Source of the DNA: Scyliorhinus canicula
Lineage: Eukaryota
DNA: 35,555 nucleotides
Reading direction: 5' to 3'
Assembly (NCBI RefSeq): GCF_902713615.1
Contig: NW_024055478.1
Span: 248,001-283,555 of the forward strand
The translations under genes and the position numbers were made by a program. Below the pieces are notes generated by a model that was not told the origin of the DNA, did no database searches, and saw only the letters and a program-made list of their open reading frames with translations. Of the stretch, positions 1,386 through 32,357 are shown piece by piece (position 1 is the stretch's first letter; every line of letters starts with the position of its first letter).

Positions 1386-1860
1386 GACAACATGAAAATG
1401 GGCAGTGTGCTAAATAGCGAGGAGGAATGGTTTAGATTGCAGGATGATATAGACGGACGGGCTAGATGGGCAGAACAGTGGCAAATGAAATTTAACCCTG
1501 AAAAGGGTGAGATGATGCATTTTGGGAGGACTAATAATGCAAGAAAATACACAATGAACGGTAGGTTGCCAAGAAGTATAGAAGCAAGAGGGACCTTGGG
1601 GTTCATGTCCGTAAATCCCCGAAGGTAACAGGACAAGGACTTAAGCTGGTGAAGATGACATGTGGAATGCTTGTCTTTATTAGCCGACGCATGGAATATA
1701 AGAGTCGGGAGATTATTATGGAGCTGTATAAAACGCTGGTTATCCCGCAGCCGGCGTATTTTGTGCACGTCTGGTCGTCACATTATGGGAAGGATGCGAT
1801 TGCACCAGAGAGGGTGCAGAGGTGATTAATGAGACAACGTATATTTAAGAAACTCGTTGG
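1386..1860 (+). mobile_element. CR1-clade LINE fragment (RT C-terminal region), decayed
   Basis: ORF 1392-1628 has LQDDIDGRARWAEQWQMKFNPEKGEMMHFGR, a typical CR1 RT thumb region. Confidence 0.85.
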
Positions 1861-3195: not shown

Positions 3196-3453
3196 GGACG
3201 ACTAAGGGGCCTGAGGCAGGGAAACTGACGATGGCGCCACACGGCCGCCTCTCCTTAGGTCAAAGAAAGTGAAGGAGAGACTGAACGGAGCTGCTGAAAT
3301 GTAAGTGGGTTGTTAATGAAGATCACACGGAGCTGTTTCCTCGAGCAGATCCTTAGATAATACAACGATTGATGAGAAATAAAGACCAGGACAATTCCGT
3401 CTATTATCTACACTGCGATGTGTTATACTATAGAGGGCGGATCTAAATAAAGG

Positions 3454-3559
3454 CATGATGTGGAGATGCCGGCGTTGGACTGGGGTGAGCACAGTAAGAA
3501 GTCTTACAACACCAGGTTAAAGTCCAACAGGTTTGTTTCAAACACGAGCTTTCGGAGCA
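3454..3559 (-). repeat. Inverted pseudo-LTR segment of the Penelope insertion
   Basis: 106-bp reverse complement of 5158-5263. Confidence 0.95.
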
Positions 3560-4994
3560 GTTGAACCAGGAACATTCCTCGTCACAATGGATGTCTCGGC
3601 ACTCTACACCAGCATCCCCCATGACGACGGCATTGCTGCAACAGCCTCAGTCCTCAACACCGACAACTGCCAATCTCCAGACGCAATTCTGCAACTCATC
3701 CGTTTCATTCTAGACCACAACGTCTTCACCTTCGACAACAAATTCTTCATCCAGACGCACGGAACAGCCATGGGGACCAAATTTGCACCTCAATATGCCA
3801 ACATCTTCATGCACAAGTTTGAACAGGACTTCCTCACCACACAGGACTTTCAACCGATGCTATACACCAGATACATCGATGACATTTTTTTCCTTTGGAC
3901 CCACGGCGAGACATCACTGAAACGACTACACGATGACATCAATAAGTTCCATCCCACCATCAAACTCACCATGGACTATTCTCCAAATTCAGTTCCATTC
4001 TTGGACACACTCGTCTCCATCAAGGACGGTCACCTCAGCACCTCGCTTTACCGCAAGCCCACAGATAATCTCACGATGCTCCACTTCTCCAGCTTTCACC
4101 CGAAACACATTAAAGAAGCCATCCCCTATGGACAAGCCCTCCGTATACACAGGATCTGCTCAGACAAGGAGGAGCGCAACAGACACCTACAGATGCTGAA
4201 AGATGCCCTCGTACGAACGGGATATGGCGCTCGACTCATTGATCGACAGTTCCACCGCGCCACAGCAAAAAAACCGCACCGATCTCCTCAGAAGACAAAC
4301 ACGGGACACCACTGACAGAGTACCCTTCGTCGTCCAGTACTTTCCTGGGGCGGAGAAACTACGACATCTTCTTCGCAGCCTCCAACACATCATCAGCGAG
4401 GATGGACATCTTGCCAAGGTCATCCCCACACCCCCACTACTGGCCTTCAAACAACCGCGCAACCTCAAACAAACCATTGTTTGCAGCAAATTACCCAGCC
4501 TTCAGAACAGCAACCACAACACCACAAAACCCTGCCAGGGTAATCTCTGCAAGACATGCCAGATCATCGACATGGACACCACCATTACACGTGGAAACAC
4601 CACCCACCAGGTACGCGGCGCATACTCGTGCGACTCGACCAATGTAGTCTACCTCATACGCTGCAGGAAAGGATGTCCCGAAGCGTGGTACATTGGCGAG
4701 ACCATGCAGACACTGCGACAACGAATAAACGGGCATCGTGCGACTATCAACAGGCAGGACTGTTCCCTTCCAGTTGGGGATCACTTCAGCAGTCAAGGAC
4801 ATTCAGCCTCTGATCTCCGGGTCAGCATTCTACAAGGAGGCCTTCAGGAGACGCGACAACGCAAAATTGCTGAGCAAAAACTTATAGCTAAGTTCCGCAC
4901 GCATGAATGCGGACTCAACCGGGATCTGGGATTCATGTCGCATTACATTCGGCCCTCACCAACAAGCCTGGACTTGCAGAGGCCTACCGACTGA
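3560..4994 (+). pseudogene. 5'-truncated Penelope ORF (RT C-half + GIY-YIG), 1 frameshift
   Basis: LVTMDVSALYTSI, GTAMGTKFAPQYANIFM, RYIDDIF in ORF 3533-4315; VVYLIRC...YIGET...RINGHR in ORF 4203-4994; the frames join at A7 4267-4273. Confidence 0.9.
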
Positions 4995-5106
4995 ACTGGC
5001 TTGGGACAATTCACACCTCTTTAACCTGGAGTTACCTCTCTCTCTGCATCTTTGATGATTTGATTGCCTGCAGGTGCTCGCATTCCGGGGCATCTCTGAC
5101 TGTGTC

Positions 5107-5114
5107 TATATAAA
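5107..5114 (+). promoter_or_regulatory. TATA box in Penelope pseudo-LTR (second copy at 8091-8098)
   Basis: TATATAAA 30 nt upstream of an Inr-like CCATTC (A at 5137). Confidence 0.5.
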
Positions 5115-5139
5115 CATTTCTGGAACAAGCCTTTCCATT

Positions 5140-5174
5140 CACCTGAAGAAGGAGCCGTGCTCCGAAAGCTCGTG
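5140..5174 (+). ncRNA. Minimal type I hammerhead ribozyme
   Basis: CAC-CUGAAGA-A-GGAGC(CGU)GCUCC-GAAA-GC-UC-GUG: both core boxes, 5-bp stem II, palindromic AGCU stem III, stem I CAC/GUG. Predicted cleavage after C5171. Confidence 0.85.
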
Positions 5175-5260
5175 TTTGAAACAAACCTGTTGGACTTTAA
5201 CCTGGTGTTGTAAGACTTCTTACTGTGCTCACCCCAGTCCAACGCCGGCATCTCCACATC

Positions 5261-7979
5261 ATGGCTACCATTGACACCGCAAACTGCCGGCTCAAAGTGG
5301 AGAGGATCTCCAGGAAGATCGCGCATATAGACACTGACATTCAGTTTCTACAAAGATGCAAAAAAGCAGACAAGATCCCGAAAGGACTACAGATCAAAAA
5401 CCCACTCAAGTCGACTTACAACACAGACTACGCTGAAAGACTCTGCCACCGCACCTCTGTCACACTCCTCAAACACCTCGTACACCAACTCTACAGCAGT
5501 CGACGCAACCTGGAAACCAAGAGAAAGGCCATATTCTCAACTTGCGCTCAGGACACAGCAGACCAGCTGCGGAACACCGCCAAACAGATGAGACAGCAAT
5601 ACTATGCCACCTACATGCACACCAAGAACAGGAAGCTTGAGAAACTTGGCATCACCACCAGCAGCAATCAAGCTTCTCCCGGTACAACAGTCGAAAACAA
5701 TACAGGGAAATCCATTGTCAACTTGTCAGACTACACCCTTCAACCAGACGAAATCGAAGTCCTCAGCAGAGGGCTCAATTTCTGCACCACCACCAAAATG
5801 GACCCCATCAGTCTCGCGGCAGATACGGAGGAATTCATCAGGCGAATGAGGCTCCGGGAATTCTTCCACAGACCCCAAGAGGCCGACAGCGAACCCAGGG
5901 ACACGACCAATGAACCGGAACAGCAGACCGCGAGATCTGCAGTGCAGCAACCGAAAAGGAAAGAGTCAAATTGGACCCCTCCGGAAGGCCGCTGCCCTAG
6001 ACTCGACATGTATGTTCAAGCCGTCAGAAGTCGTGTCAATGCCAGATTCATCACTCGCAATCACAAGGCAGCCTCAAACGTCACCCAAGCACAACGCAAC
6101 GCCATCCGCACTCTCAAGACCAACCGCAACATCGTCATCAAACCAGCAGACAAAGGAGGGGCCACCGTCATACTGAACAGAACAGACTACTGCAAAGAAG
6201 TATACCGACAACTCGACAACCAGGAACACTACAGGCAGTTACCCGCAGATCCAACCAAGGAACACATCCGCCAACTCAGCAGACTGATCAAGACCTTAGA
6301 TCCAGACCTTCAGAACACCCTACGTGCTCTCATCCCACGTAATCCCCGCATTGGAGATCTCTACTGCCTCCCGAAAATACACAAGGCCAACACACCAGGC
6401 CGTCCTATCGTTTCAGGCAATGGGACCCTGTGTGAGAACCTCTCTGGCCACATCGAGGGCATCTTGAAACCCATCGTACAAGGTACACCCAGCTTCTGTC
6501 GCGACACGACGGACTTCCTACAGAAACTCAGCACCCATGGACCAGTTGAACCAGGAACATTCCTCGTCACAATGGATGTCTCGGCACTCTACACCAGCAT
6601 CCCCCATGACGACGGCATTGCTGCAACAGCCTCAGTCCTCAACACCGACAACTGCCAATCTCCAGACGCAATTCTGCAACTCATCCGTTTCATTCTAGAC
6701 CACAACGTCTTCACCTTCGACAACAAATTCTTCATCCAGACGCACGGAACAGCCATGGGGACCAAATTTGCACCTCAATATGCCAACATCTTCATGCACA
6801 AGTTTGAACAGGACTTCCTCACCACACAGGACTTTCAACCGATGCTATACACCAGATACATCGATGACATTTTTTTCCTTTGGACCCACGGCGAGACATC
6901 ACTGAAACGACTACACGATGACATCAATAAGTTCCATCCCACCATCAACTCACCATGGACTATTCTCCAAATTCAGTTCCATTCTTGGACACACTCGTCT
7001 CCATCAAGGACGGTCACCTCAGCACCTCGCTTTACCGCAAGCCCACAGATAATCTCACGATGCTCCACTTCTCCAGCTTTCACCCGAAACACATTAAAGA
7101 AGCCATCCCCTATGGACAAGCCCTCCGTATACACAGGATCTGCTCAGACAAGGAGGAGCGCAACAGACACCTACAGATGCTGAAAGATGCCCTCGTACGA
7201 ACGGGATATGGCGCTCGACTCATTGATCGACAGTTCCACCGCGCCACAGCAAAAAAACCGCACCGATCTCCTCAGAAGACAAACACGGGACACCACTGAC
7301 AGAGTACCCTTCGTCGTCCAGTACTTTCCTGGGGCGGAGAAACTACGACATCTTCTTCGCAGCCTCCAACACATCATCAGCGAGGATGGACATCTTGCCA
7401 AGGTCATCCCCACACCCCCACTACTGGCCTTCAAACAACCGCGCAACCTCAAACAAACCATTGTTTGCAGCAAATTACCCAGCCTTCAGAACAGCAACCA
7501 CAACACCACAAAACCCTGCCAGGGTAATCTCTGCAAGACATGCCAGATCATCGACATGGACACCACCATTACACGTGGAAACACCACCCACCAGGTACGC
7601 GGCGCATACTCGTGCGACTCGACCAATGTAGTCTACCTCATACGCTGCAGGAAAGGATGTCCCGAAGCGTGGTACATTGGCGAGACCATGCAGACACTGC
7701 GACAACGAATAAACGGGCATCGTGCGACTATCAACAGGCAGGACTGTTCCCTTCCAGTTGGGGAATCACTTCAGCAGTCAAGGACATTCAGCCTCTGATC
7801 TCCGGGTCAGCATTCTACAAGGAGGCCTTCAGGAGACGCGACAACGCAAAATTGCTGAGCAAAAACTTATAGCTAAGTTCCGCACGCATGAATGCGGACT
7901 CAACCGGGATCTGGGATTCATGTCGCATTACATTCGGCCCTCACCAACAAGCCTGGACTTGCAGAGGCCTACCGACTGA
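5261..7979 (+). CDS. Penelope-like RT/GIY-YIG polyprotein, about 905 aa if three 1-bp indels are corrected
   Basis: MATIDTANCRLKVE... IKPADKGG, YCLPKIHK, PGRPIVS, RYIDD, GIY-YIG. Frame breaks at 6947-6948 (-1), 7251-7257 (+1) and 7764-7765 (+1). Confidence 0.9.
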
Positions 7980-8123
7980 ACTGGCTTGGGACAATTCACA
8001 CCTCTTTAACCTGGAGTTACCTCTCTCTCTGCATCTTGATGATTTGATTGCCTGCAGGTGCTCGCATTCCGGGGCATCTCTGACTGTGTCTATATAAACA
8101 TTTCTGGAACAAGCCTTTCCATT

Positions 8124-8158
8124 CACCTGAAGAAGGAGCCGTGCTCCGAAAGCTCGTG
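8124..8158 (+). ncRNA. Minimal type I hammerhead ribozyme (3' pseudo-LTR copy)
   Basis: Identical to 5140-5174. Confidence 0.85.
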
Positions 8159-8375
8159 TTTGAAACAAACCTGTTGGACTTTAACCTGGTGTTGTAAGAC
8201 TTCTTACTAAATAAGGCAGAAGAATGAGTTCCGGTGGCGGCAATGCGGAGCAAAGCCGCTCATTCGGCAGCTCCCGCTGGGAAACTGACTTTGGGGCTCT
8301 TTTCGGTGCTCCCAACGGAGCTGTGTGGGCAAATCCCGACGTGGGAAGAGGACAGCAGTCGACCCCTACGGTCCT

Positions 8376-9217
8376 ATGGTCCGGACCTGGAGTGGGGTAA
8401 GGAGAAAACCGGAGAAAGCACCCCTGAAAAAGCGGGGGAAGGAAGACAAAATGGCGGCCGCAGAGACCCGGAGGACTGGAGGCAGTGGGCCCAGGAGCAG
8501 CAGGCGACTCTGCTGCGCTGCTTCCAGGAGCTTAAATTGGAGCTGCTGGAGTCGCTGAAGGTAACCAACAGGGAGCTGAGGAGACTCAGACAGCCCAGGG
8601 GGCTGCGATCCGGGAGCTGCAGGCAGCAGGCCTCCGAAAGGGGAGGATGAGGCCGTGCCGTGGCGGGGAAGGTGGAGATGCACGAGGCGTTCCATAAAAG
8701 ATGGCAGGAGCGGTTTCGAGAGCTGGACAACCGGTCAAGGCAGAAGAATTTACGGATCCTGGGCCTCACGGAGGGGCTGGGAGGGGTTGGACTAGCGGCC
8801 TATGTGATGACTATGTTAACTCGCTGATGGGGGCTGGGTCCTTCCAGGGGCCCCTGGAGTTAGAGGGGGCCTACAGAATTCTGACTAGGAGTCCCAAGCC
8901 CGAACGAGCCGCCACGGGCGGTGTTGGTGCGGTTTCATCAGTTCGTGGACCATGAGTGTGTGCTCGGTGGCCAAGAAGGAGCAGAGCAGCAAGTGGGAGA
9001 ACACGGATGTGCGGATGTTCCAGGACTGGAGTGCGGAAGTGGTGAGGCGGAGGGCTGGGTTTAACCGGACGAAGGCGGTGCTCCACAAATGGAGTGTGAA
9101 GTTCGGCATGTTGCAGCGGCGCATCTCTGGGTCACCCATAAGGATTAGTACCATTATTTTGAGTCCCCGGAGGAGGCGTGGGCCTTTGTGCAGGCCGAGA
9201 AATTGGACTCAAACTGA
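8376..9217 (+). pseudogene. L1 ORF1p (frameshifted)
   Basis: MVRTWSG...KMAAAE, NRSRQKNLRILGL, NEPPRAVLVRF, VRMFQDWSAEVVRRRAGFN; TGA at 9215-9217. Confidence 0.8.
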
Positions 9218-9867
9218 GGGTCTAAGATGGGGGATACTGTATAATACTGTACTTGTATTTGCTTGGTTTAATGTAAGATGTGGGTTGGCCTTAGGGTGGG
9301 TGGGGTGATGTCGATTTGTCTTTTCTGTATTGGTTTTTCTGTAGGGGTCTGGTGGATGGGTTCGGGCAGGGGGGTAAGCGGGGAGTTCGGGGAGCTGATG
9401 GGGGGGGACTGACAATGGGAGTTGCCCTAGAGGATGCGGGGCCAGGCAGGGCGAAAGCATGGGCTTTCTGCGGGTTTCCCGCGCTGGGAGATGGTGGGGG
9501 CGGCGTCGGGGCTGAGAAGCGCGGGTCGTTCCTGGCTGTTTTCTTTTCCTGTGCAAGAGTGGGGGTGGGGGGGAGGAGGACCCGTTGACGGGCACGATGG
9601 AGGAGGGGTAGTACCACGTGGGGAGGAGTCGGAGGCAAGGTGGGAGTCGCCGGGGACAGCAGAAGATAGCTGGCTCACGGGAGTGCTATGGAGGGAGGGG
9701 CGCAGCTATTACGGGGTCCTAGCCTGGGGGGGGGGGGGGTACCGGGTTGCTGCTGAAACGGTCAGGAAGGAGCTGGAGGATGCAGGGGGTGCTGGAGGGG
9801 GGGAGTTGCCGCCATGGGAAACTGACAGAGCGGGGGACGCTGGCCGGGGGTGGGCAAGGGATGGGGT

Positions 9868-12800
9868 ATGGCTAATCGGCAGGGGAGGGGGACAGGGAGC
9901 CCTCTGATCCAGCTGATAACCTGGAATGTGAGGGGGCTGAATGGGCCGGTCAAACGGGCCCGGGTGTTTGCGCACCTGAAGGGGCTGAAGGCGGATGTGG
10001 CCATGCTCCAAGAGACACACCTGAAAGTGGCGGACCAGGTTCGGCTGAGGAAGGGATGGGTGCGCCAAGTATTTCACTCAGGGCTGGATGAGAAGAGTAG
10101 GGGGGTGGAGATCCTGGTGGGGAAAAAGGTGTTGTTTGAGGCGTTAAATGTGGTGGCTGACAGTGGCGGGAGATATGTGATGGTGAGTCGTAAGCTGCAG
10201 GGGGAGCGGGTGGTGTTGGTGAATGTTTACACCCCAAATTGGGACGAGGCGGGATTTATGTGGCCTATGTTGGGCCGCATTCCGGACCTGGAGGTGGGGG
10301 GCCTTATCATGGTGGGGGATTCAACACGGTACTGGATCCCCCATTGGATCGATCCAAGTCCCGGATGGGTAGGAGGCCAGTGGCAGCTAAGGTGTTGAGG
10401 GGATTTATGGACCAGAGTTGGGGGTGGGGGGTGGATCCCTGGAGGTTTGCGAGGCAAAGGGCCAGGGAGTACTCGTTTTTCTCCCACATACATAAGACCT
10501 ACTCAAGGATTGATTTCTTTGTCCTGAGCAGGGGGTTGGTTTCGAGGGTGGAGGATGTGGAATACTCCACCATTGCCATTTCAGATCATGCCCCGCACTG
10601 GGTGGACCTCGGGCTGGGAGAACGTCTGCTCTGGACGTTCGCTCTGGCACTAGGAGGTGGGGCTACTGGCAGACGAGGAGGTGGCCGAGAGGGTTCGGGT
10701 TGTATCGAGAGGTACCTTGAGGCCAATGACAACAGGGACGTCTGCGTGGGGACTGTCTGGGAGGCATTGAAGGTGGTGACTAGAGGGAAGTTGATTTCCA
10801 TCCGAACCCATAGGGAGAGGGGGGAGCAGAGGGAGAGGGAGAGACTGATAGGGGAGTTCGTGTGGGTGGATAGGAGATAAGCGGAGGCTCCGGAGGACGG
10901 ATTGCTGGTGGAGAGACGTAGCCTTCAGGCCAGGTTCGACCTATTGACTACCAGAAAGGCGGAAGCTCAGTGGTGGAAAGCACAGGGGGCGGTGTATGAG
11001 TATGGGGAGAAGGCGAGCAGAATGCTGGCTCACCAGCTCCGAAAGCGGGACGCGGCCAGGGAGATTGGGGGAGTGACGGATAAGGCTGGGAAGGTGGTAT
11101 GGAGGGGGGTAGATGTTAATGGGTCTTCAGGGGCTTCTATGGGGAACTTTACCCGTCAGAACCCACGGTGGAGGGGGGTGGAATGGGGCTTCTTGGACAA
11201 GCTGCGATTCCCGAGGGTGGAGCAGGAGCAGGTGGAGGGACTGGGGCGCCGATCGAGCTGGAGGAGATGGTCAAAAGGATAGGGAGCATGCAGTCGGGGA
11301 AGGCACCGGGGCTGCACGGGTTTCCGGCGGAATTTTAGAAAAGGTATGTGGACCTGTTGGGTCCCCTGTTGGTCTGGACCTTTAACGAGGCAAGGGGGTA
11401 TGGGGGGGGGGGCTTTGCCCCCAACTATGTCACGGGCGCTGATTTCCTTGATCCTGAAGCGGGACAAGGACCCTCTGCAGTGCGGTTCATAGAGGCCAAT
11501 TTCGCTGCTAAACGCCGACGCTAAGCTGCTGGCAAAGATCCTGGCCACTAGAATAGAGGATTGCGTGCCCGGGGTCATTCATGTGGACCAGACGGTGTTA
11601 GTGAAGAGAAGGCAGTTGAATACGAACGTGCGAAGGCTCCTCAATGTCTTATGATGCCGGCGTGGAAGGGGAGGCGGAGATAGTGTTGGCATTGGATGCA
11701 GAGAAGGCCTTTGATAGGGTTGAGTGGGAGTATCTGTGGGAGGTGTTGGAGAGGTTTGGGTTTGGGGAGGGGTTTATCCGGTGGGTGGACTGCTCTACGA
11801 GGCCCGGTGTGAGTGTAGCCACAACTAGGAGGAGGTCAGAGTACTTTCGGCTGTACGGGGGACGAGACAGGGTGCCCCCTGTCCCCCTTGCTTTTCACGT
11901 TGGCGATTGAACCCTGGCCATGGCGTTGAGGGAGTCAGGAAACTGGAGGGGCCTGGTGCGGGGTGGGGAGGAGCATCGAGTGTCGCTTTATGTGGACGAC
12001 TTGTTGCTGTATGTGGCGGACCCTGGGGGGGATGCCGGAGTGATGCGGTTTCTTAGTGAATTCGGGGGTTTCTCTGGGTATAATTGAACCTGGGCAAGAG
12101 TAAGTTTGTTTGTGGTGCATCCGGGGATCAGTAGGAGGGGATGGTAGGCTCCCACTTAAGCAGGGAGGGAAGACTTATGTGTCCAGGTGGCTGGAGTTGG
12201 GGGGCCCTGCACAAGCTCAACCTCACAAGGTTGGTGGAGCAGATGGAGGAGGAGTTTAAGAGGTGGGAGATGTTACGCTGTCACTGGCGGGGAGGGTGCA
12301 GTCCGTTAAGATGACGGTGCTCGCGAGGTTTTTGTTCCTGTTCCAGGCCGTTTTAGGAGGGTCAACGGGAGTATCACGGGATTTTGAGGGCGGAAGGGAC
12401 CCGAGGGTGATAAGAGTGTTCCTGAACGGGCAGGGATATGGGGGGGGGGGGGGGGGCTGGCGTGCCCAACCTCTTGGGTACTATTGGCTGCCACACAGCG
12501 ATGGTGCGTAAGTGGGTAATGGTCGAGGAAGGGGCAGCATGGAAGAGATGGAGGCGGTGTCATGTGTGGGCACGAGCCTGGAGGCGCTGGCAACGGCGCC
12601 GTTGCCGCTCCCTCCAACGAGGTATACCACCCGTTTGGCGGCTACCCTCAAAATTTAGGGGCAATGAGATGCATAGGGGGAAGTGGGGGGCTCGATGGAG
12701 CCCGGATACGGGGGAACCATCGGTTTGTCCCAGGGAGCATTGATGGCGGATTTCTGGGCTGGCACAGGGCATGGGTTAGGATTTGAGGTATCTGTTTGGA

Positions 12801-13615
12801 GAGGAGGTTCGCCAGCTTGGGGGAGTTAGAGGCGAAGTTTGGGCTCCCCCCGGGGAACATGTTTAGGTACATACAGGTGAGGGTGTGTGCCAGGCAGCAG
12901 GTGGAGGGGTTCCCCTTGCTACCCCACGTGGGGTGCGGGACAGGGTGCTCTCGGGTTGTGGGTTGGAGGAGGGAGGATTTCGGACATATACCGGGTGATG
13001 CAGGATAGATACGAGCCTCGGTGGAGGAACTGAAGGGTAAATGGGAAGAGGGAGCTGGGTGAGGAGATTGAGGAGGGGACGTGGGCGGATGCCTGGAGAG
13101 AGTGAATTCCTCCTCTTCCTGTGCGAGGCTTAGCCTCATACAGTTCAAGGTGCTGAATAGGGCCCACATGACTGGGACGAGGATGAGTAGGTTTTTCGGG
13201 GGCGAGGACAGGTGTGCTAGGGCTCGGGGGTCCCTGTGAACCACGCCCATATGTTCTGGGCATGCCCGGTCGCTGGGGGTAGTTTTGGAAGGGCGTAGCG
13301 AGGACGGTGTCGAGAGTGGTGGGATCCAGGGTCAAGCCAGGCTGGGTACTCGCAATTTGTGGGATTGCAGTGGAGCAGGGAGTGCAGGAGGTGAAAGAGG
13401 CCGGTGTTCTGGCCCTTTGCGTTCTAGTAGCCCAGCGGAGGATCGTGCTCCATGGAAAGGGTGCGAGGCCCCCAAGCGTGGAGGCCTGGATCAATGATAT
13501 GGCGGGGTTCATTAAATTGGAGAAGGTGAAATTTGCCTGAGGGGATCAGTATAGGGGTTCTTTAGGCGGCGGCCAGTCTTTCCTGGACTTCCTTGCGGAA
13601 CGGTATGGGAAATAG
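9868..13615 (+). pseudogene. L1 ORF2p (APE endonuclease + RT), frameshifted
   Basis: ITWNVRGLNG, AMLQETH, YSRIDFF, SDHAP, LDAEKAFDRVEW, YVDDLLLY (about 11990), NHAHMFW. Confidence 0.9.
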
Positions 13616-17643: not shown

Positions 17644-18160
17644 GGGAGGCACGGTAGCACAATGTTTAGCACTGCTGCATCACAGCTCCAGGGTCCCAGG
17701 TTCAATTCCGGCCTCGGGTGACTCCCTTTGTGGAGTTTACACGTTCTACCCGTGTCTGCGTGAGTTTCCCTCGGGTGCTCCGGTTTCCTCCCACAGTCCA
17801 AAGATGCGCAGGTTAGGTGGATTGGTCTTGTTACCTAAATTGTCCTTTACTGTCTACAAAGGGCAGTAAGAAGTCTTACAACACCAGGTTAAAGTCCAAC
17901 AGGTTTGTTTCAAACACGAGCTTTCGGAAAGATCGTGTTTGAAACAAACCTGTTGGACTTTAACCTGGTGTTGTAAGACTTCTTACTGTGCTCACCCCAC
18001 TCCAACGCCGGCATCTCCACATCATGTCTAAAAAGGTTAGGTGGGGTTATTGTGTTTTTGGGATCGGGTAAAGGCGTAGGCTTAAGTAGGCTGCTCTTGC
18101 CAAGAGCCGGTGCAGACTCGATGGGCCAAAAAGCTGTAAATGCACTGCAAATTCTGTTTT
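17644..18160 (+). mobile_element. HE1/V-SINE-type tRNA-derived SINE interrupted by a Penelope fragment
   Basis: A/B boxes, V-domain gggtgctccggtttcctcccacagtccaaagatg, CR1-like tail gcagactcgatgggcc. Confidence 0.85.
17864..18026. mobile_element. 163-bp palindromic Penelope pseudo-LTR insertion
   Basis: Arms 17864-17925 and 17927-17988 (62 bp, 1 mismatch) plus a tail ending at ATG 18024-18026; TSD TGTCTACAAAGG (17851-17862) / TGTCTAAAAAGG (18025-18036). Confidence 0.9.
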
Positions 18161-21178: not shown

Positions 21179-24100
21179 CTATCTTTGAGCCAGGAAGTCC
21201 AGAAAAGGCTGCCATCGTTTATAGAACCCTTGTATTGATCCTCTCAGGGCAAATTTGACCCTTTCCAATTTTATAAATCCCGCCATGTCACTGATCCAGG
21301 TCTTCACACTTGGGGGCCTTGCATCCTTCCACTGTAGCAGAATCTTTCGTCGGGCTACTAGGGACACAAAGGCCAGGACACCGGCCTCTTTTGCCTCCTG
21401 CACTCCCGGCTCTACCGCAACTCTAAAAATCGCGCGTCCCCACCCAGGTTTGACCCTGGATCAAACCTCCCTCGACACCGTCCCCGCCACCCCCTTCTAG
21501 AATTCTTCCAGTGCTGGGCATGCCCAGAACATATGGGCGTGGTTCGCTGGACTCCCCGAACATCTGGTGCACCTGTCCTCACCCCCAAAGAACCTACTCA
21601 TCCTAGTCCCGGACATGTGGGCCCGGTGCAGCACCTTAAATTGAATGAGACTATCCTCGCACATGAGGAGGAAGAGATTACTTTCTCCAAGGCATCCGCC
21701 CAAGTCCCGCCCTCTATCTGCTCCCCTAGTTCCTCCTCCCATTTAGCCTTCAGCCTCCACTGACTCCTCCTCCACCTCATGCATTACCTTATAGATGTAA
21801 GACACCTTCCCCTCTCCGACCCACACCCTGAAAGCACTCTGTCCATCGTCCCCCGCGACAGCAGCAGAGGGAATCCCTCTACCTGTCGCCTAGCAAACGC
21901 CTTTACCTGCAAGTATCTGAACATGTTCCCTTGGGGAAGGCCAAATTTATCTTCCAGTTCTCCCAGGCCCGCAAACCTCCCGCCAATAAACAGGTCCCTC
22001 AATTTGCTGATGCCCGCCCTTTGCCACCCCCTAAATCCCCCATCCTTTTTCCCCGGGATGAACCGATGGTTTCCACCCAGTGGAGCCTCCATCGAGCCCC
22101 CTGTTTCCCCCGATGCCGTCTCCACTGCCCCCAGATTCTTAGGGTCGCCGCCACCACCGGGCTCGTGGTAAACCTCTGAGGGGAGAGCGGCAACGGTGCC
22201 GTTACCATGGCACCCAGGCTCGTAACTCTACATGACGCCATCTCCATTCTTTTCCACGCCGCCCCTACCCCCTCCATCACCCATTTACGCACCATTGACA
22301 CATTGGCTGCCCAATAGTACCCCAGAAGGTTGGGCAACGCCAGCCCGCCTCTATCCCTCCCTTGCTCCAGGAACACACTCTTCACTCTCGGAGTCCCATG
22401 TGCCCACACAAAGCTCAAAATACTGCTAGTCACTCTCCTAAAGAAGGCCCTGGGGATAAAGATGGGCAGGCACTGAATGAGGAACAAGAACCTCGGAAGC
22501 ACCGTCATTTTGACGGACTGAACCCTCCACGCTAACGATAATGGCAGCATGTCCCACCTCTTGAACTCCTCCTCCATCTGATCTACCAGTCTGGTGAAGG
22601 TATGCTAGTGAAGAGTCCACCAGTCCCTGGCCACCTGCATCCCCGGGTACCTAAAGCTCTCCCCTGCCCGCCTAAGCGGGAGCCTACCGATTCCTTCCTC
22701 CTGGTCTCCAGGGTGCACCACAAACACCTCGCTCTTGACTAAATTTAATTTATAACCTGAAAAGGTCCCAAAATCAGCTAGCAACTCCATCACTCCCAGC
22801 ATCCCTCCAACCGGGTCCGCCACATACAGTAACAGGTCACATACAACGACACCCTATGTTCCTCTCCACCTCGCACCAAACGTCTCCACCTCCCTGAATC
22901 CCTCAACGCCATTACCAACGGCTCGATTGCCAGTGCAAACAACAAGGGGGACAGGGGGCAACCCTGCCTGGTCACTCGGTAAAGCCGGAAGTACTCCGAC
23001 CTCCTCCTATTCGTGGCCACGCATGCCATTGGGGCCTCATATAGCAGCCTTACCCATCTAATGAACCCTTCATCAAATCCAAACCTCCCCAACACCTCCC
23101 ATAGGTACCCCTACTCTACTCTATAGAAGGCCTTCTCCGCATCCAGTGCCACCACTATCTCTGCGTCCCCCTCAATCGCCGGCATCATGATGACATTCAA
23201 CAATCTCCGCACATTCGTGTTCAGCTGCCTTCCCTTCACGAAACCTGTCTGGTCCTCGTGCACAACCCCTGGCACACAGTCCTCTATCCTGGTGGCCAGG
23301 ATTTTTGCCAGGACCTTAGCATCCACGTTGAGGAGAGATATGGGCCTGTATGAACCATACTGCTGGGGGTCCTTGTCCCTCTTTAAAATGAACGAGATCA
23401 GCGCCTGCGACATCTTCGGGGGCAAAGCCCCCCCCCCCTTCCCACGCTTCATTGAGTGTCCGCACCAGCAAGGTCCACAAACGTTTTATAAAATTCCACC
23501 GGGAGACCATCCGGCCCCGGTGCCTTCCCTGACTGTATCTGCCCGATCCCCTTAACTAGCCCCTCCAGCTCAATCGGCGCACCCAACCCCTCCTTCTTCT
23601 CCTCCTGCACCTTCGGGAAAGAAAGCCCGTCAAGGAACCTCTCCATTCCCCTCCTCTCCCCCGTTGGCTCCGACCGGTACAGTTCCCCGTAAAAGTCCTT
23701 GAAGACCTCATTCACCTCTACCCCCTTCCGCACCACATTCCCACTCTTGTCTCTCACTCCAGCAATTTCCTTAGCCGCATCCCGCTTGCGGAGCTGATGA
23801 GCCAGCATCCTACTCGCCTTTTCACCATGTTCGTACACTACCCCTTGTGCCTTCCTCCACTGTGCCTCCGCCTTTCTAGTGGTCAGCAAATCAAATTCAG
23901 CCTGCAGGCTGCGTCTCCCCCCCAACAGTCCCTCCTCTGGTGCCTCTGCATACCTCCTGTCCACCTCCAGCATCTTTCCCACCAGTCTATCCCTCTCACT
24001 CCTCTCGCTCCTCTCCCTGTGTGCCCGGATGGATATCAGCTCCCCACGAATCACTGCCTTCAGGGCTTCCCAGACCATCCCCACCTGAACCTCCCCCATA

Positions 24101-24969
24101 TCATTCACCTCGAGGTACCCCTCAATACTTGCCCGGACCCTCCTACACACCTCCTCCTCCGCCAACAACCCCACATCCAACCGCCACAACGGACGTTGGT
24201 CCCGCACCTCCCCCATCTCCAACTCTATCCAATGCAGAGCGTGGTCGGAGATTGCAATGGCCGAATACTCGACCTCCTCCACTCTCGGAATCAGTCCCCT
24301 ACTCACCACGAAGAAATCTATCCGAGAGTAGACCCTATGTACGTGGGAGAAGAAAGAGTACTTGCGTGCCCTCGGCCTCACAAACCTCCATGGATCCACC
24401 CGCCCTATCTGATCCATAAACCCTCTCAGTACCTTGGCCGCCGCCGGCCTCCTACCTGTCCTAGAGCTGGACCGATCCAGTGAAGGATCCAACACCGTAT
24501 TAAAGTTCCCCCCCCCCCCCCACCATGATCAGACCTCCCGCCTCCAGATCCGGGACCTGTCCCAACATACGCCTCATAAAGCCCGCATCATTCCAATTTG
24601 GGGCATACACACTAGCCAGGAGCACCTTCTCTCCTTGTAGCCTGCCCCTAACCATAACATACCTACCCCCCCCTTTATCCGCCACCACCTCCGATGCCTC
24701 AAACAACACATTTTTCCCCACCAGAATCGCCACTCCCCGGTTCTTCACATCCAACCCAGAGTGGAAAACCTGCCCCACCCATCCCTTCCTCAGGTGGACC
24801 TGGTCCGCCACCTTCAGGTGGGTCTCCTGAAGCATTGCCACATCTGCCTTTAGCCCCTTCAGGTGAGCCAGTACCCTCGACCGCTTCACCGGCCCATTCA
24901 ACCCTCTCGCATTCCAGGTGACCAACCAGATCAGAGGGCGTCCCCCCCCCTCCCCCGTTGACTAGCCAT
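21179..24969 (-). pseudogene. L1 ORF2p, frameshifted
   Basis: VTWNARGLNGPVKR, AMLQETH, YSRIDFF, RPISLLNVDAKVLAKILA, RQGCPLSPLLF, CTRCSGSPANHAHMFWACP, ends FLAQR*. Confidence 0.9.
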
Positions 24970-25631
24970 AGCCCGTCAACTGCCCGCACCAGGCCAGCAC
25001 CCCCTGCCCGGCCCAGTCCCCACAGCGACAATACCTCTCCTCTGTCCCCCCAGCCCCCACCAGCTCCTTCCTGACCCTACCAGCAGCAACCCGGTATTCC
25101 CCTTTCCCCCCTCCCTTCCCCCCCAGGCTAGGAACCCTCCCAGCCGCGAACCGTCCTCCATTGTACTTCCGTGGGTCAGTTAACATCTGCTGACCCCGGA
25201 AACTCCTGCCAATAACCCGACCCCTCCCAAAGTGGGATCATCCCCCAATCTATCCCTCCTCCAGGCACCGCTCCAGCGCAGGGAAGAACCAGTTAAGGCC
25301 CCGCCTCCCCCGTCACCGTCTCCGCCCCCCTGCCACGCAGCGCAGGAAACCAGTGGAAAGCCCGCGCTTTCGCACTGCCCCACCACACCCTTCTGACGCA
25401 GCTCCCAAATCACCCCCCAACCATACCCCCCTCCGACATAGAATACAACATACCCCCCGACCCTCCCCGCAAGATACACAACTCAACCAATGCCCCACAG
25501 CAGAAAAAAACATAGCAGAACAACACCCCCATAAATAACCATATCAAAATTGCAAAAGTACAAAAAAAAGATCATAGCAACAGCAGAATCCAGCGTTAAG
25601 ATATTACAACCGACCCCGCAACCCCAAACCC

Positions 25632-25947
25632 CTAGTTCAAGTCCAGTTTCTCCGTCCGCACGAAGGCCCACGCCTCCTCCGGGGAATCAAAATAATAATG
25701 TCGGTCCGAATAAGTTACCCACAGGCGCGCGGGCTGCAACATTCCGAACTTTTGCCTGTAAAGCACCTCCTTCGTCCGATTAAATCCGGACCGCCGCTTA
25801 GCCACCTCCGCACTCCAATCCTGGTAGATCCGTACTACCCAATTCTCCCACTTGCTGCTCTTCACCTTCTTGGCCCAGCGCAGCACACACTCCCGATCAC
25901 TGAACCGGCGGAACCTCACCAGCACCGCGTGGGGGTTCATTGTCCAT
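25632..25947 (-). pseudogene. L1 ORF1 remnant: start codon joined to the C-terminal third
   Basis: cctATGGAC-AATGAACCCCCACG then AVLVRFRRFSDRECVLRWAKK...LDLN*. Confidence 0.8.
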
Positions 25948-26534
25948 AGGCCGGGAGACGTCGAAAAATTTCCGTTTTGGGCTCTAAAAAGAGCCGAAAG
26001 GACCGGTTAAAACGGGAGCTCCCAAATGTGGGCTTCCTACTTCATCACAGGATATTCCTGAATGATAATAATTGGGCAAATATAAGGACCGCTTACTCAT
26101 GTGAAATGGTCATTTTTGTCAGACAACAAAGAAATATTATAACCTCGAGACAGAATCCAGCTTAGCTCAGTGACATTAGAGCAGGAAACAATCAGAATGA
26201 CAGTAACAGTCACGTGCTGTCGAATGTGCTCACATAACAGAAGTTAGACTCACATGCAAGATATCGGATTCCAAGTAATCCAAATTAAACCCACAGAATA
26301 TAAATTATCAGGCACGCCCCAACGACTATACTGACCATACAAAGTCTTCTCAGAAATTGAATTTACACCATGAAACGCCATGCGTTTGACGCCATGAAAC
26401 AGCACAAAGTGTATCACGTGAGAGATGTGAAGAAAATTGAGACGAAATCACTTAAGGAAATATAAGGATATTTTTGTATCTATCCTAGGCCGCTTGATTA
26501 TTATAATTGGCTGTTTCACTGTTAATGCATTGCT

Positions 26535-27167: not shown

Positions 27168-27253
27168 TCACCTGAAGAAGGAGCTGCGCTCCGAAAGCTC
27201 ATGTTTGAAACAAACCTGTTGGACTTTAACCTGGTGTTGTAAGACTTCTTACT
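27168..27253 (+). mobile_element. About 85-bp solo Penelope terminus containing a hammerhead
   Basis: Matches 5139-5224; flanked by TTGAAGGAAAATG at 27155-27167 and 27253-27265. Confidence 0.9.
27169..27203 (+). ncRNA. Hammerhead ribozyme variant
   Basis: CAC-CUGAAGA-A-GGAGC(UGC)GCUCC-GAAA-GC-UC-AUG: loop II changed, stem II and core intact, first stem I pair disrupted (G to A). Confidence 0.7.
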
Positions 27254-29933: not shown

Positions 29934-32357
29934 ACCCAATAGTAGCTGAGAGATAGAGGAACAGATTGGGCGGCAGATCTTGGATAGGTGCAGAAGTAAC
30001 AGAGTTGTTGTCATGGGTGACTTCAACTTCCCTAATATTGACTGGAACCTCCTTCGTGCAAATGGTTTGGATGGAGCAGATTTTGTCAGGTGTGTACAGG
30101 AAGGATTCCTGACTCAATATGCATAGAGGCCGACTAGCGTGGAGGCCATATTGGACTTGTTGCTCGGCAACGAACCAGACCAGGTGTCAGATGTCTCGGT
30201 GGGAGAGGATTTCGGTGACAGTTACCACAACTCCTTCACCTTTTCCATAGTCATGGGGAGGGATAGGAACAGACAGTGTGGGAAGCTATTTAATTGGGGG
30301 AGGGGAAATTATACTGCTATTAGACAGGAGCTGAGGAGCATAAAGTGGGAACAATTGTTCTTGGGGACATGCACAACAGTAATGTGGGGATTGTTTAAGA
30401 AGCACTTTCTGGGAGTGCTGAATAGTTTTGTTCCACTAATACGAGGAAAGAATGGTAAGGTGAAGGAGCCTTGAATGACAAGAAAAGTGGAGCTTCTAGT
30501 CAAGAGGAAGAAGGAAGCTTACGTAAGTTTGAGGAAGCAAGGATCTGACTCGGCTCCAGAGGGTTACAAGGTAGCCAGGAAGGAACTCAAAAATGGACTG
30601 AGGAGAGCTGGAAGGGGGCATGAAAAAGCCCTGGTGGGAAGGAGTAAGGAAATCCCCAATGTGTTCGACACTTATGTGAGAAATAAGAGGATGATCAGAG
30701 TGAGAGTCGGGCCGATCGGGGATAGTGGAGGGAACTTGTGCCTAGAGTCTGAAGAGATGTGGGAGGCCCTAAATGAACACTTTGCTTCAGTATTCACTGG
30801 AGAGAAGGGCCTTGTTGCCCATGAGAACAGTGTGAACCAGGTTAATAGACTCGAACAGGTTGATATTAAGAAGGAGGATGTTTTGGAAATTTAAAAAAGC
30901 ATCAGGACATCAGGATAGATATGTCCCCTGGGCCTGACGGGATATACGCAAGGTTTCTACCAGGAGTGAGGGAAGAGATTGCTGCGCCGTTGGCGATGAT
31001 CTTTGCGTCCTCAATCTACACTGGAGAAGTAATGGATGATTGGACGGAGGCGAATGTTGTTTCCCTGTTCAAGAAAGGAAATAGGGAAATCCCTGGGAAT
31101 TAGAGACCCATTAGTCTTATGTCTATGGTGAGCAAAATATTGGAAGGATTCTGAGAGATGGGATTGATGATTATTTAGAAAAACATAGTTTGCTTATAAT
31201 AGTCAGCATGACTTCTGAGGGGCAGGTCATGCCTCACAACCCTCATTGAATTATTTGCGGATGTGACGAGAGACATTGATGAAGGTCGAGCAGTGAATCT
31301 GGTGTATATGGATTTCAGTAAGGCACTTGATAAGGTCCCCCATGGTACGCTCATTCAGAAAGTTAGGGGGCGGGGCAGCACGGCGGCACAGTGGTTAGCA
31401 TTGCTGCCTATGGCGCTGAGGACCTGGGTTCGAATCCCGGCCCTGGGTCACTGTCTGTGTCTGCGTGGGTTTCGCCCCACAACCCAAAGATGTGCAGGTT
31501 AGGTGGATTGGCCACGTTAAATTGCCCCTTAATTGGAAAAAATAATTGGGTATTCTAAATTAATTTTAAAAAAAAGAAAGTTGGGGGCATGGGTACAGGG
31601 AAGTTTGGCTGTCTGGAAACAGAATTGGCTGGCCGTAAGAAGAGAGCGAGTGGTAGTGGATGGAAATTATTCCGCCTGGAGGTTGGTGACCAGTGTCCCG
31701 CAAGGATCTATTCTGGGACCTCTGCTCTTTATGTTTTTTATAAATGAATTGGATGAGGTAGTAGAAGGGTAGATTAAAAGGTTGCCGATGACAGGAAGGT
31801 TAGTGGAGTTATAGATAGTGTTGAGGGTTGTTGCAGGTTACAACAGGACATTGACAGTTTAAAGGGCTGGGCTGAGAAGTGGCAGATGGAGTTCAACCTT
31901 GATGAATGTGAAATTATTCATTTTGGGAGATCAAATTTGAATGCTGGATACAGGGTTAAAGGCAGGATTCTTGGAAGTGTGGAGGAACAGAGGGATCTCG
32001 GAGTACTCGTACATAGATCCTTCAAAGTTGCCATCCAGTTTGATCAGATTGTTAAGAAGGCGTATGGTGTGTTGGCTTTCATTAACAGGGGGATTAAGTT
32101 TAAGAGCTGCATGGATTTGCTGCAGCTTCATAAAACTCTAGTTAGATTTAGCAGGATGCTGCCTGGACTGGAGGGCATGTCTTATGAAGAAAGGTTGAGG
32201 GAGCTAGGGCTTTTCTCACTGGAGCGAAGAAGGCAGAGAGGTGACTTGATAGAGGGCAAGGTGATGAGAGGCATGGATATAGTGGATAGCCAGAGACATT
32301 TCCCCAGGGCTGTCATGAGGGGACATAATTTTCAGGTGATCGGAGGAAGATATAGAA
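29934..32357 (+). mobile_element. 5'-truncated CR1 LINE (APE C-half + RT), decayed
   Basis: [54 protein letters not shown]. Confidence 0.9.
31372..31575 (+). mobile_element. V-SINE variant with an A-tail and a long TSD
   Basis: gggcagcacggcggcacagtggttagc head, B-box ggttcgaatcc, ends ctaaattaattttaaaaaaaa; TSD AGAAAGTTAGGGGGC (31357-31371) / AGAAAGTTGGGGGC (31575-31588). Confidence 0.85.

What the first reader, a model, noticed from the sequence alone, without database searches (positions are those of the whole stretch)
5140..8158. Two minimal hammerheads exactly one unit (2984 nt) apart: candidate self-processing or circular RNA route to tandem insertion
Seen: identical hammerheads with a palindromic AGCU stem III too short to fold alone. 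Known: Penelope-like elements carry such minimal type I hammerheads, thought to cleave as dimers, and retrozymes use paired hammerheads to release monomers that circularise. Inference: a transcript from the 5' pseudo-LTR holds both motifs and could form a double hammerhead, releasing a unit-length RNA (5172-8155). Reverse transcription round a circle would give the observed 1.5-mer of near-identical copies.
Basis: partly seen in the sequence, partly recalled or inferred. Interest (0 to 1): 0.75.

Follow-up and report, generated by a model that had tools for sequence, protein, structure and literature searches.

The report
Shark Penelope retrotransposon with hammerhead repeats
This is a young copy of a well-known kind of jumping gene (a Penelope-like element) in a shark genome. 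Its two end-repeats each carry the small self-cutting RNA motif already published for this class, and the proposed circular-RNA route is a 2014 hypothesis that this locus neither proves nor excludes.

Summary
The same 29-nt minimal type I hammerhead lies at 5143-5171 and 8127-8155, exactly 2984 nt apart, and a third, slightly decayed copy lies at 27172-27200. The motifs sit in the pseudo-LTRs of one Penelope-like element (PLE) insertion at 3454-8208, flanked by a 9/8-bp target duplication. The insertion is an inverted 106-nt arm, then a 1665-nt 5'-truncated copy, then a full 2984-nt unit.

Evidence here leans towards linear, uncleaved templates. All five insertion termini in the window lie at two fixed sites, 53 and 92 nt downstream of the cut site. 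RNA-run reads show the same two termini with many different flanks. This is the "tail" signature of internal reverse-transcription initiation (Frangieh 2024). An 85-nt solo copy starts 32 nt after a TATA box and crosses the cut site intact. No pile of RNA read ends occurs at 5171/5172.

A circle is not excluded for the 1.56-unit product. The scan reached the same verdict on another piece of this genome (s1-200281). Verdict: a known kind, low interest.

The parts
3445..3453 (.). Left target-site duplication AAATAAAGG
   Evidence: Matches AAATAAGG at 8209-8216 with one extra A
3454..3559 (-). Inverted 5' arm, the reverse complement of 5158-5263. It starts at RT start site 2 (CATCATG), runs through the 39-nt tail and the unit 3' end, and stops in hammerhead helix II
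   Evidence: the repeat finder I4, 99% complementary; alignment A1. It is joined to the direct copy at a 6-nt imperfect microhomology at 3554-3559
3560..5224 (+). 5'-truncated upstream copy (0.56 unit), forming the upstream pseudo-LTR. It holds part of the RT, the thumb, the CX4CX2C linker and the GIY-YIG endonuclease
   Evidence: No substitutions and 3 single-base length differences against 6545-8208; RVT_1 and GIY-YIG hits; translations
5107..5114 (+). TATATAAA box in the pseudo-LTR (second copy at 8091-8098). The predicted transcript start is about 5139-5141, at TCACC
   Evidence: The solo copy 27168-27253 begins at the base equal to T5139. An RNA-run contig and a strand-change joint lie at 5137-5139
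5143..5171 (+). Minimal type I hammerhead 1, predicted cut after C5171
5225..5263 (+). 39-nt 'tail': the first bases of the full unit, ending at the ORF start codon 5261-5263. It also occurs as an optional 3' extension of other insertions
   Evidence: Termini at 5224-5226 and 5261-5263 in the window copies and as loose ends with many different flanks in 4 runs. It matches the published tail and the two RT start sites
5225..8208 (+). Full 2984-nt unit
   Evidence: the repeat finder D1-D4; right end abuts the target duplication
5261..7978 (+). RT-endonuclease ORF region of the full unit. It has the DKG motif, YIDD, the CX4CX2C linker and GIY-YIG. In this copy the frame is broken near 6946, 7251 and 7764, which gives an apparent in-frame TGA at 7181-7183
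   Evidence: The majority of reads differ in length at these three places (table 4). Homologues in sharks reach 92% identity
8127..8155 (+). Minimal type I hammerhead 2, predicted cut after C8155, 53 nt before the insertion's 3' end
8209..8216 (.). Right target-site duplication AAATAAGG
27168..27253 (+). Solo 85-86-nt copy of the same family, equal to 5139-5224. It is flanked by a 12-13-bp duplication TTGAAGGAAAATG and holds a complete hammerhead core with two loop II changes and G1.1 changed to A
17864..18026 (.). Fold-back copy of the same family. An inverted 64-nt arm ends at site 1 and a direct ~100-nt arm ends at site 2. Both arms stop at the GAAA box / helix II base. TSD TCTACAAAGG / TCTAAAAAGG
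   Evidence: (I16)

Best explanation
One recent retrotransposition of a Neptune-type Penelope-like element produced 3454-8208. Shown: the domain architecture, the anatomy of the insertion, and the positions of its termini. Inferred, from the published in-vitro behaviour of an Anolis PLE: the element's RT-endonuclease nicked both strands of an AT-rich target and started reverse transcription at internal sites of the RNA. On the bottom strand it started at site 1 (...CTTCTTACT, 53 nt past the hammerhead cut site) and copied 4.65 kb of a more-than-unit-length template. That gave the full unit plus 0.56 of a unit, which forms the pseudo-LTR. On the top strand it started at site 2 (...CATCATG, the end of the 39-nt tail) and copied only 106 nt, as far as hammerhead helix II. 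The two cDNAs were then joined at a 6-nt microhomology, which made the inverted arm. Each pseudo-LTR carries a TATA-type promoter, and about 32 nt after it the class-typical minimal hammerhead. That motif can form an active core only by pairing its AGCU with a second copy. Its likely job is occasional, protein-assisted trimming of multi-copy or read-through transcripts. It is not an obligatory step of insertion. The longer-than-unit template was most likely linear: either a transcript of a tandem master copy, or a cDNA transfer between the terminally redundant ends of the RNA. A hammerhead-made circle is a minority possibility.
For: PLE identity. RVT_1 (E 1e-9) is followed by a weak C-terminal GIY-YIG hit (E 1e-3, below the Pfam cut-off), with the ADKG, YIDD and CX4CX2C motifs. 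There are 4612 homologues, the best listed in sharks (up to 92% identity, Scyliorhinus torazame), and many carry RVT_1 + DUF8422 + HTH_animal + GIY-YIG.

Anatomy. A partial tandem, an inverted 5'-truncated arm, a tail and a TSD match the standard PLE layout.

Two discrete termini. Of the five ends in the window, three are at 5224-5225 and two at 5263. In four RNA-type runs, reads run into many different flanks behind 5224-5226 (104-124 reads in the raw runs) and behind 5261-5263 (379-475 reads). This matches the two internal RT start sites that define the tail.

Linear uncut template. The solo copy 27168-27253 starts 32 nt after TATATAAA and spans the cut site.

No read-end pile at 5171/5172, although depth there is 200-575.

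Hammerhead reality. There are 0.0 descriptor hits per shuffled window. In 80 distant PLE loci there are 23 descriptor hits, all on the ORF strand, none on the other strand and none in shuffles. They share the bulged A, G10.1-C11.1 and a palindromic helix III, and helices I and II differ in sequence from locus to locus. The best-supported variants among shark reads fall at N7, loop II and H17.
Against: The source of the longer-than-unit template is not observed. A transcript starting at about 5139 and ending past the 3' pseudo-LTR cannot by itself template 1665 nt of an upstream copy. Some extra step is therefore needed: a longer tandem master, strand transfer, or a circle. None of these leaves a distinguishing scar. 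The mechanistic steps are carried over from a Poseidon-clade lizard element and were not tested on this family. The RNA runs are poly(A)/oligo-dT libraries dominated by solo fragments embedded in host transcripts on both strands, so missing cleavage ends are weak evidence. The detection threshold was a fifth of local depth. Another note of this scan (s1-228633, not checked here) reports a copy fused to 18S rRNA exactly at the cut site, which suggests the ribozyme does cut in vivo at least sometimes.
Confidence: 0.75

Rival explanations
1. The reader's model, which is also the model of Cervera & de la Pena 2014. A pseudo-LTR-driven transcript forms a double hammerhead and is cut after C5171 and C8155. 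The 2984-nt RNA is ligated into a circle, and the element's RT runs round it more than once from an internal start site. That gives the 1.56-unit cDNA.
For: The spacing is exactly one unit and the helix III AGCU is palindromic. The tandem copies have no substitutions between them. RT initiation is internal and needs no defined RNA 3' end, which suits a circle. Every tail-bearing copy contains the 3'-end-to-5'-end junction. Related non-LTR retrozymes, derived from PLE pseudo-LTRs, do form circRNAs. The field has no accepted mechanism for pseudo-LTR regeneration.
Against: At least one template was linear, TSS-initiated and uncut (the solo copy). No cDNA 5' end in the window lies at G5172. There is no pile of RNA ends at the cut site. 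The same was reported for Anolis, where hammerhead mutants also insert normally in vitro. Naiad PLEs form the same tandems without canonical hammerheads. Minimal PLE hammerheads cleave poorly in vitro. The predicted dimer minimum-free-energy fold is an extended helix II duplex, not the double hammerhead.
Confidence: 0.15
2. Two separate insertions. A 5'-truncated copy with its inverted arm landed first. A second, full-length copy then homed precisely into the 3' end of the first, because PLE endonucleases favour their own ORF-pLTR junction.
For: The Anolis PLE protein cleaves a target that corresponds to its own ORF-pLTR junction, and self-insertion is mentioned as one option.
Against: A single target duplication brackets the whole 4755-nt structure and there is no internal duplication. 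The junction 5224/5225 is seamless and identical to the junction inside the tail-bearing solo copies. There are no substitutions between the copies.
Confidence: 0.05
3. The near-identical 1.56-mer is an assembly artefact: a collapsed or mis-joined young repeat rather than a real tandem.
For: The only differences between the copies are single-base run-length changes, which are typical of long-read errors. PLE tandem/inverted structures are known to trouble assemblies.
Against: The structure has proper, matching target duplications at its two outer ends and a microhomology junction. The layout is the standard one for the class. Contigs from independent runs join 7862-8024 to the pseudo-LTR (table 8).
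Confidence: 0.03

Closest known systems
Minimal type I hammerheads of Penelope-like elements (Cervera & de la Pena 2014, PMC4209133; Lunse, Weinberg & Breaker 2017, known here only from the reference list read)
   Same: CUGANGA and GAAA boxes, an unpaired nucleotide between A9 and G10.1, a G10.1-C11.1 pair, no helix III loop with palindromic 15.2-16.2, a short helix I, location in both pseudo-LTRs about 3 kb apart, and many dispersed solo and opposite-strand copies.
   Different: Nothing of kind. This is a shark family (helix II of 5 bp, AGCU palindrome). The cut site lies 90 nt upstream of the start codon, whereas in the Anolis Poseidon element it lies 26 nt inside the ORF.
Poseidon PLE of Anolis carolinensis, PAc (Frangieh et al. 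2024, PMC11167929)
   Same: Tandem or partial-tandem loci, an AT-rich target, two RT start sites that define a 30-40-nt tail, extension from both target strands (which explains inverted arms), and no RNA-seq ends at the hammerhead site.
   Different: A different clade, since the CX4CX2C linker here points to the Neptune type. The start sites are placed differently relative to the ORF: here site 2 coincides with the ATG, while in PAc the sites lie 111-118 nt inside the ORF. There is no biochemistry for the shark element.
Retrozymes: plant LTR retrozymes and animal non-LTR retrozymes (PMC4918200, PMC7229834, bioRxiv 10.64898/2026.07.22.740005)
   Same: Hammerheads spaced one unit apart, self-processing to monomers, and proposed circRNA templates for tandem cDNA. 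Animal retrozymes are proposed derivatives of PLE pseudo-LTRs.
   Different: Retrozymes are small (170-1000 nt) and non-coding, and their circRNAs have been shown experimentally. This unit is 2984 nt, encodes RT-EN, and no circle has been shown for any PLE.

Membership tests
Hammerhead ribozyme (minimal type I, PLE variant) | Conserved core: C3 U4 G5 A6 N7 G8 A9 ... G12 A13 A14, A15.1-U16.1, H17 | tested here: met
   CUGAAGA at 5143-5149, GAAA at 5164-5167, A5167/U5170, C5171; identical at 8127-8155
Hammerhead ribozyme (minimal type I, PLE variant) | Helix II closed by G10.1-C11.1, with one unpaired nucleotide after A9 | tested here: met
   A5150 is the bulge; GGAGC (5151-5155) pairs with GCUCC (5159-5163). 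The same bulged A is seen in 19 of 23 motifs in distant PLE loci
Hammerhead ribozyme (minimal type I, PLE variant) | Palindromic, loop-less helix III that can pair only with a second motif | tested here: met
   AGCU at 5167-5170. Relatives carry AGCU, AUAU, ACGU, AAUU and longer palindromes
Hammerhead ribozyme (minimal type I, PLE variant) | Helix I flanking the core and the cleavage site | tested here: met
   CAC (5140-5142) pairs with GUG (5172-5174), plus CA/UG beyond a U.U x2 internal loop. It is short. From a transcript starting at about 5139 only 3-4 nt of the 5' strand exist
Hammerhead ribozyme (minimal type I, PLE variant) | Match to the curated Rfam hammerhead covariance models | tested here: not met
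   No hit at gathering score or at E<=10, even on an 81-nt slice. The models require a helix III hairpin, so this does not argue against the minimal variant
Hammerhead ribozyme (minimal type I, PLE variant) | Self-cleavage after H17 | tested here: inconclusive
   No pile of read starts or ends at 5171/5172 in two raw RNA runs (threshold one fifth of depth). The libraries are poly(A)-selected and dominated by solo copies. Cleavage itself is not testable with these tools
Penelope-like element (EN+, canonical) | Single ORF with RT followed by a C-terminal GIY-YIG endonuclease | tested here: met
   RVT_1 E 1e-9. GIY-YIG E 1e-3, below the Pfam cut-off, but the motifs VVYLI...YIGET...R..NGHR...PV..HF...E...GLN are present. 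Homologues carry PF01541. The ORF of this copy is frame-broken at three places
Penelope-like element (EN+, canonical) | PLE-specific N-terminal DKG motif | tested here: met
   IKPADKGGATVI. It is invariant in the alignment with 9 homologues. Craig 2021 names it as diagnostic
Penelope-like element (EN+, canonical) | Pseudo-LTRs from a partial tandem, an optional inverted 5'-truncated copy, a 30-40-bp tail and a TSD | tested here: met
   Searches compared with the description
Neptune clade of PLEs | [quoted passage not shown] | tested here: met
   PCQGNLCKTCQ; the criterion comes. Clade placement by phylogeny was not tested
Retrozyme / circRNA-propagated element | Unit-length circular RNA detected | not testable with these tools
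   The junction of a circle equals the genomic tandem junction. The 'goes back 2985' joint comes from the 7-nt overlap of the chosen stretch ends, not from a circle

The most novel reading that the evidence does not exclude
The two hammerheads of a pseudo-LTR-driven transcript really do cut as a dimer in shark cells. The 2984-nt coding RNA is then ligated into a circle that serves as a rolling-circle template. That would make PLE pseudo-LTR regeneration a retrozyme-like process and this young, abundant shark family a natural system in which to show it.
Probability: 0.12. Interest if true: 0.6.

Novelty: already known. Interest (0 to 1): 0.15.

Why it matters
How Penelope-like elements regenerate their pseudo-LTRs, and what their hammerheads do in vivo, are still open questions. 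[quoted passage not shown] This locus does not answer either question. It does show that a shark genome holds a very young family with full-length tandems, hundreds of expressed solo ends and clean terminus signatures. That family reproduces, in a different PLE clade, the two-start-site "tail" pattern found biochemically in a lizard element. It would be a reasonable family for the decisive wet-lab tests.

Tried and rejected
- **Rfam:** cmscan at gathering score and at E<=10, on 35 kb, 12 kb and 81 nt, found no hammerhead family. I do not count this against the motif, because the models need a helix III hairpin.
- **Dimer folding:** the cofold minimum-free-energy structure pairs the two helix II hairpins into one duplex rather than forming the double hammerhead. 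A first script using mfe_dimer crashed. Thermodynamics therefore gives no support for the active dimer.
- **PDB sequence search:** nothing for the RT, and only T4 endonuclease II at E 0.27 for the EN.
- **Pfam on alternative frames:** no HTH_animal hit in the copy of Pfam used, although homologues carry it.
- **The look-up of encoding contigs:** Distant metagenome loci were used instead.
- **The 'goes back 2985' joint:** rejected as evidence of circles. It follows from my choice of stretch, because 5040-5046 equals 8024-8030.
- **The in-frame TGA at 7181:** considered as selenocysteine or read-through and rejected. The frame of this copy differs from the upstream copy and from most reads between about 6946 and 7251.
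- **Lunse et al. 2017:** the paper is not held.
Full report
**Observation.** The 29-nt string CTGAAGAAGGAGCCGTGCTCCGAAAGCTC occurs exactly twice on the + strand, at 5143-5171 and 8127-8155. The two predicted cleavage nucleotides, C5171 and C8155, are therefore 2984 nt apart. It reads as a hammerhead as follows:
- the CUGAAGA box at 5143-5149;
- an unpaired A at 5150;
- helix II, GGAGC/GCUCC with a CGU loop, at 5151-5163;
- the GAAA box at 5164-5167;
- a loop-less palindromic AGCU at 5167-5170, in place of a helix III hairpin;
- C17, followed by GUG, which pairs with CAC at 5140-5142. The monomer fold extends helix I by CA/UG across a 2x2 U.U internal loop.

A strict descriptor for this architecture gives 0.0 hits per shuffled window. 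A third core at 27172-27200 has two loop II changes and G1.1 changed to A. Rfam's hammerhead models do not score any of these, even on an 81-nt slice at E<=10. They require a helix III hairpin, so I do not count this against the motif.

**What it sits in.** The motifs lie in the two pseudo-LTRs of one insertion, 3454-8208 (4755 nt). It is bracketed by AAATAAAGG (3445-3453) and AAATAAGG (8209-8216). From left to right the insertion holds three parts:
- An inverted arm at 3454-3559, the reverse complement of 5158-5263 (I4).
- A 5'-truncated direct copy at 3560-5224. It is joined to the inverted arm at a 6-nt imperfect microhomology (GGAGCA at 3554-3559 against GGACCA at 6539-6544).
- A full 2984-nt unit at 5225-8208.

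The overlapping 1665 nt of the two direct copies have no substitutions. They differ only by three single-base length changes in 2-3-nt runs.

**The ORF.** It starts at ATG 5261. It encodes an RT (Pfam RVT_1, E 1e-9) with IKPADKGG and YIDD, a PCQGNLCKTCQ linker, and a GIY-YIG endonuclease. In the full copy the frame is broken near 6946, 7251 and 7764. The apparent in-frame TGA at 7181 is a consequence of this, because the upstream copy and most reads have a different length at these places (table 4). I built no repaired version.

**Relatives.** A word-based protein search found 4612 relatives. The closest among those listed are in sharks: Scyliorhinus torazame at 92% and Heptranchias perlo at 86%. 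Further relatives occur in turtles, amphibians, mussels and ticks, and many have the RVT_1 + DUF8422 + HTH_animal + GIY-YIG architecture. An RT with a C-terminal GIY-YIG endonuclease, the DKG motif, pseudo-LTRs, an inverted 5'-truncated copy and a tail together define a canonical EN+ Penelope-like element. The CX2-5CxxC linker marks the Neptune/Nematis type (criteria read).

**The hammerhead as a class feature.** I fetched 80 metagenome loci that encode distant relatives (33-43% amino-acid identity) and scanned both strands with the descriptor. There were 23 hits, all on the ORF strand. There were none on the other strand and none in 20 shuffles of the whole set. The hits share traits the descriptor did not demand: a bulged A after A9, G10.1, and C11.1 in all but two. 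Helices I and II differ completely in sequence from locus to locus while staying paired. Pairing itself was a condition of the descriptor, so it is not independent evidence. Helix III is always a palindrome: AGCU, AUAU, ACGU, AAUU, ACCGGU and others. One contig (L025) has two identical motifs 3419 nt apart. This replicates the features listed by Cervera & de la Pena 2014. Among shark RNA-run reads, the best-supported variants inside the motif fall at N7 (5147), loop II (5156) and H17 (5171, C to A). A G12 variant appears in one run only. That list is truncated by the tool, so it is supportive only.

**How insertions of this family end.**
- *Termini in the window.* The window has five independent insertion termini. 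Three are at ...CTTCTTACT(G), equal to 5224-5225: 8208, 27253 and the outer end of the fold-back's inverted arm at 17864. Two are at ...CATCATG, equal to 5263: the outer end of the inverted arm at 3454, and 18026.
- *The same pattern in RNA runs.* Reads and contigs were laid on 5040-8030 from two raw RNA runs and two transcriptome-like contig sets of the same organism. Depth is 200-575 at 5140-5263 on both strands, against about 1-20 over most of the ORF.
- *Diverse flanks.* In the two raw runs, 73-78% of laid reads run on into unlike sequence. The strongest loose ends lie behind 5224-5226 (104-124 reads in the raw runs) and behind 5261-5263 (379-475 reads), with low-agreement flanks, which means many different loci.
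- *What it means.* Family-wide, insertions end at two fixed sites, 53 and 92 nt downstream of the predicted cut site, never at it. The 39 nt between the sites (5225-5263, ending at the start codon) is the PLE "tail".
- *Published parallel.* Frangieh et al. 2024 showed for an Anolis Poseidon element that RT starts at two internal sites of the RNA that bound the tail, and that both target strands are cut and extended. They also showed that hammerhead core mutants insert normally in vitro, that cleavage needs the protein, and that public RNA-seq shows no ends at the cut site.
- *Fit to this locus.* The bottom-strand cDNA runs from site 1 for 4.65 kb. The top-strand cDNA runs from site 2 for 106 nt. 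Microhomology joins the two.

**Evidence on the template.**
- TATATAAA lies at 5107-5114 and again at 8091-8098.
- The 85-86-nt solo copy at 27168-27253 has its own 12-13-bp target duplication. It begins at the base equal to T5139, 32 nt after the first T of the box, at a TCACC initiator-like sequence. A rotifer PLE pseudo-LTR has TATATATA followed by TCACT. The solo copy runs through the hammerhead cut site to site 1.
- It is therefore a run-off copy of a linear, promoter-initiated RNA that was not cleaved.
- An RNA-run contig ending at 5137 in an inverted junction, and a strand-change joint at 5139/5151, point to the same 5' end.
- The other cDNA 5' ends in the window are at 5158, about 5163-5164 (twice) and 6545. 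None is at G5172.
- No place at 5171/5172 passed the tool's test for piled read starts or ends. This test is weak: the threshold is one fifth of local depth, the libraries are poly(A)-primed, and solo copies dominate the signal.

**What remains open.** A transcript from about 5139 to the 3' pseudo-LTR cannot template the 1665 nt of upstream copy. Some way of getting more than one unit is needed. I see three candidates:
1. A transcript of a longer tandem master. An unchecked note of this scan, s1-243620, reports three hammerheads in a row elsewhere in this genome.
2. Transfer of the growing cDNA between the terminally redundant ends of the RNA. Positions 5139-5224 occur at both ends of a pLTR-to-pLTR transcript. 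This is my inference and is not tested.
3. Rolling-circle copying of a hammerhead-made circle.

All three give the same DNA. The junction of a circle is identical to the tandem junction, so junction reads cannot tell them apart. The "goes back 2985" joint is only the overlap of my stretch ends.

The circle idea is stated in full in the discussion of Cervera & de la Pena 2014. It is supported by analogy with retrozymes. Against it, Naiad PLEs make the same tandems without canonical hammerheads, and there are the Anolis data. I put it at about 0.15.

**Comparison and verdict.** The motif, its place in both pseudo-LTRs, the 3-kb spacing, the dimer requirement, the partial tandem with an inverted arm and tail, and the circular-RNA proposal are all published. 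The scan itself already examined the same idea on another piece of this genome (s1-200281) and concluded the same. What this window adds is modest:
- It reproduces the two-start-site tail signature in a shark Neptune-type family, both in DNA copies and in reads from RNA runs.
- It holds a TATA-positioned run-off copy which shows that uncleaved linear RNA is used as a template.

Novelty: already known. Interest: low.

Noticed in passing
window 3554-3559, 17920-17930: Three short cDNAs of this family (the inverted arm of the main insertion and both arms of the fold-back) all stop within 5156-5164. That is at the 3' base of hammerhead helix II / the GAAA box, 8-16 nt upstream of the predicted cut site. 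It suggests a block to the RT at the GC-rich helix II or at bound protein, rather than a cleaved RNA end.
   Followed up: partly
window 5232 (+): In the oligo-dT single-read RNA run X24, 152 read starts pile up at 5232, inside the 39-nt tail (local depth 567). No matching pile occurs in the other raw run. This is unexplained. It may come from one abundant host transcript or from duplicate reads.
   Followed up: no
window 5178-5263: Loose ends before 5178-5180 in all four runs carry a consensus such as GGAGCTGTGCTCCGAAAGCTA|GTGATTC. This is a second, more abundant subfamily that shares the 3' 85 nt but has its own hammerhead, with H17 = A and a different helix I 3' strand.
   Followed up: partly
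window 6940-7239: The single-cell RNA run X23 has a one-strand depth peak (105-164, against 11-21 on the other strand) over part of the RT/thumb region. It is probably a fragment of the element embedded in a well-expressed host transcript.
   Followed up: no
window 17649-17841, 31378-31527, 34829-35018: Three copies of a tRNA-derived SINE (62-88% alike). The Penelope fold-back at 17864-18026 lies about 20 nt after the first of them.
   Followed up: no
window 8969-13537 vs 21248-25875: A series of inverted repeats at 76-85% complementarity (repeat finder I1-I3, I6-I9, I15, I17, I18). They indicate two diverged copies of a long repeat in opposite orientation, about 7.7 kb apart at their inner ends. 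A first-reader note places an L1 at 25632-26059.
   Followed up: no
window 1684-1833 and 2629-2778: A 150-nt direct repeat, 85% identical, spaced 945 nt, just upstream of the Penelope insertion. It was not examined.
   Followed up: no
L025:30-62 and L025:3449-3481: A 3577-nt metagenome contig encodes a distant PLE relative. It carries two identical minimal hammerheads 3419 nt apart, the same pLTR-to-pLTR arrangement as in the window.
   Followed up: partly
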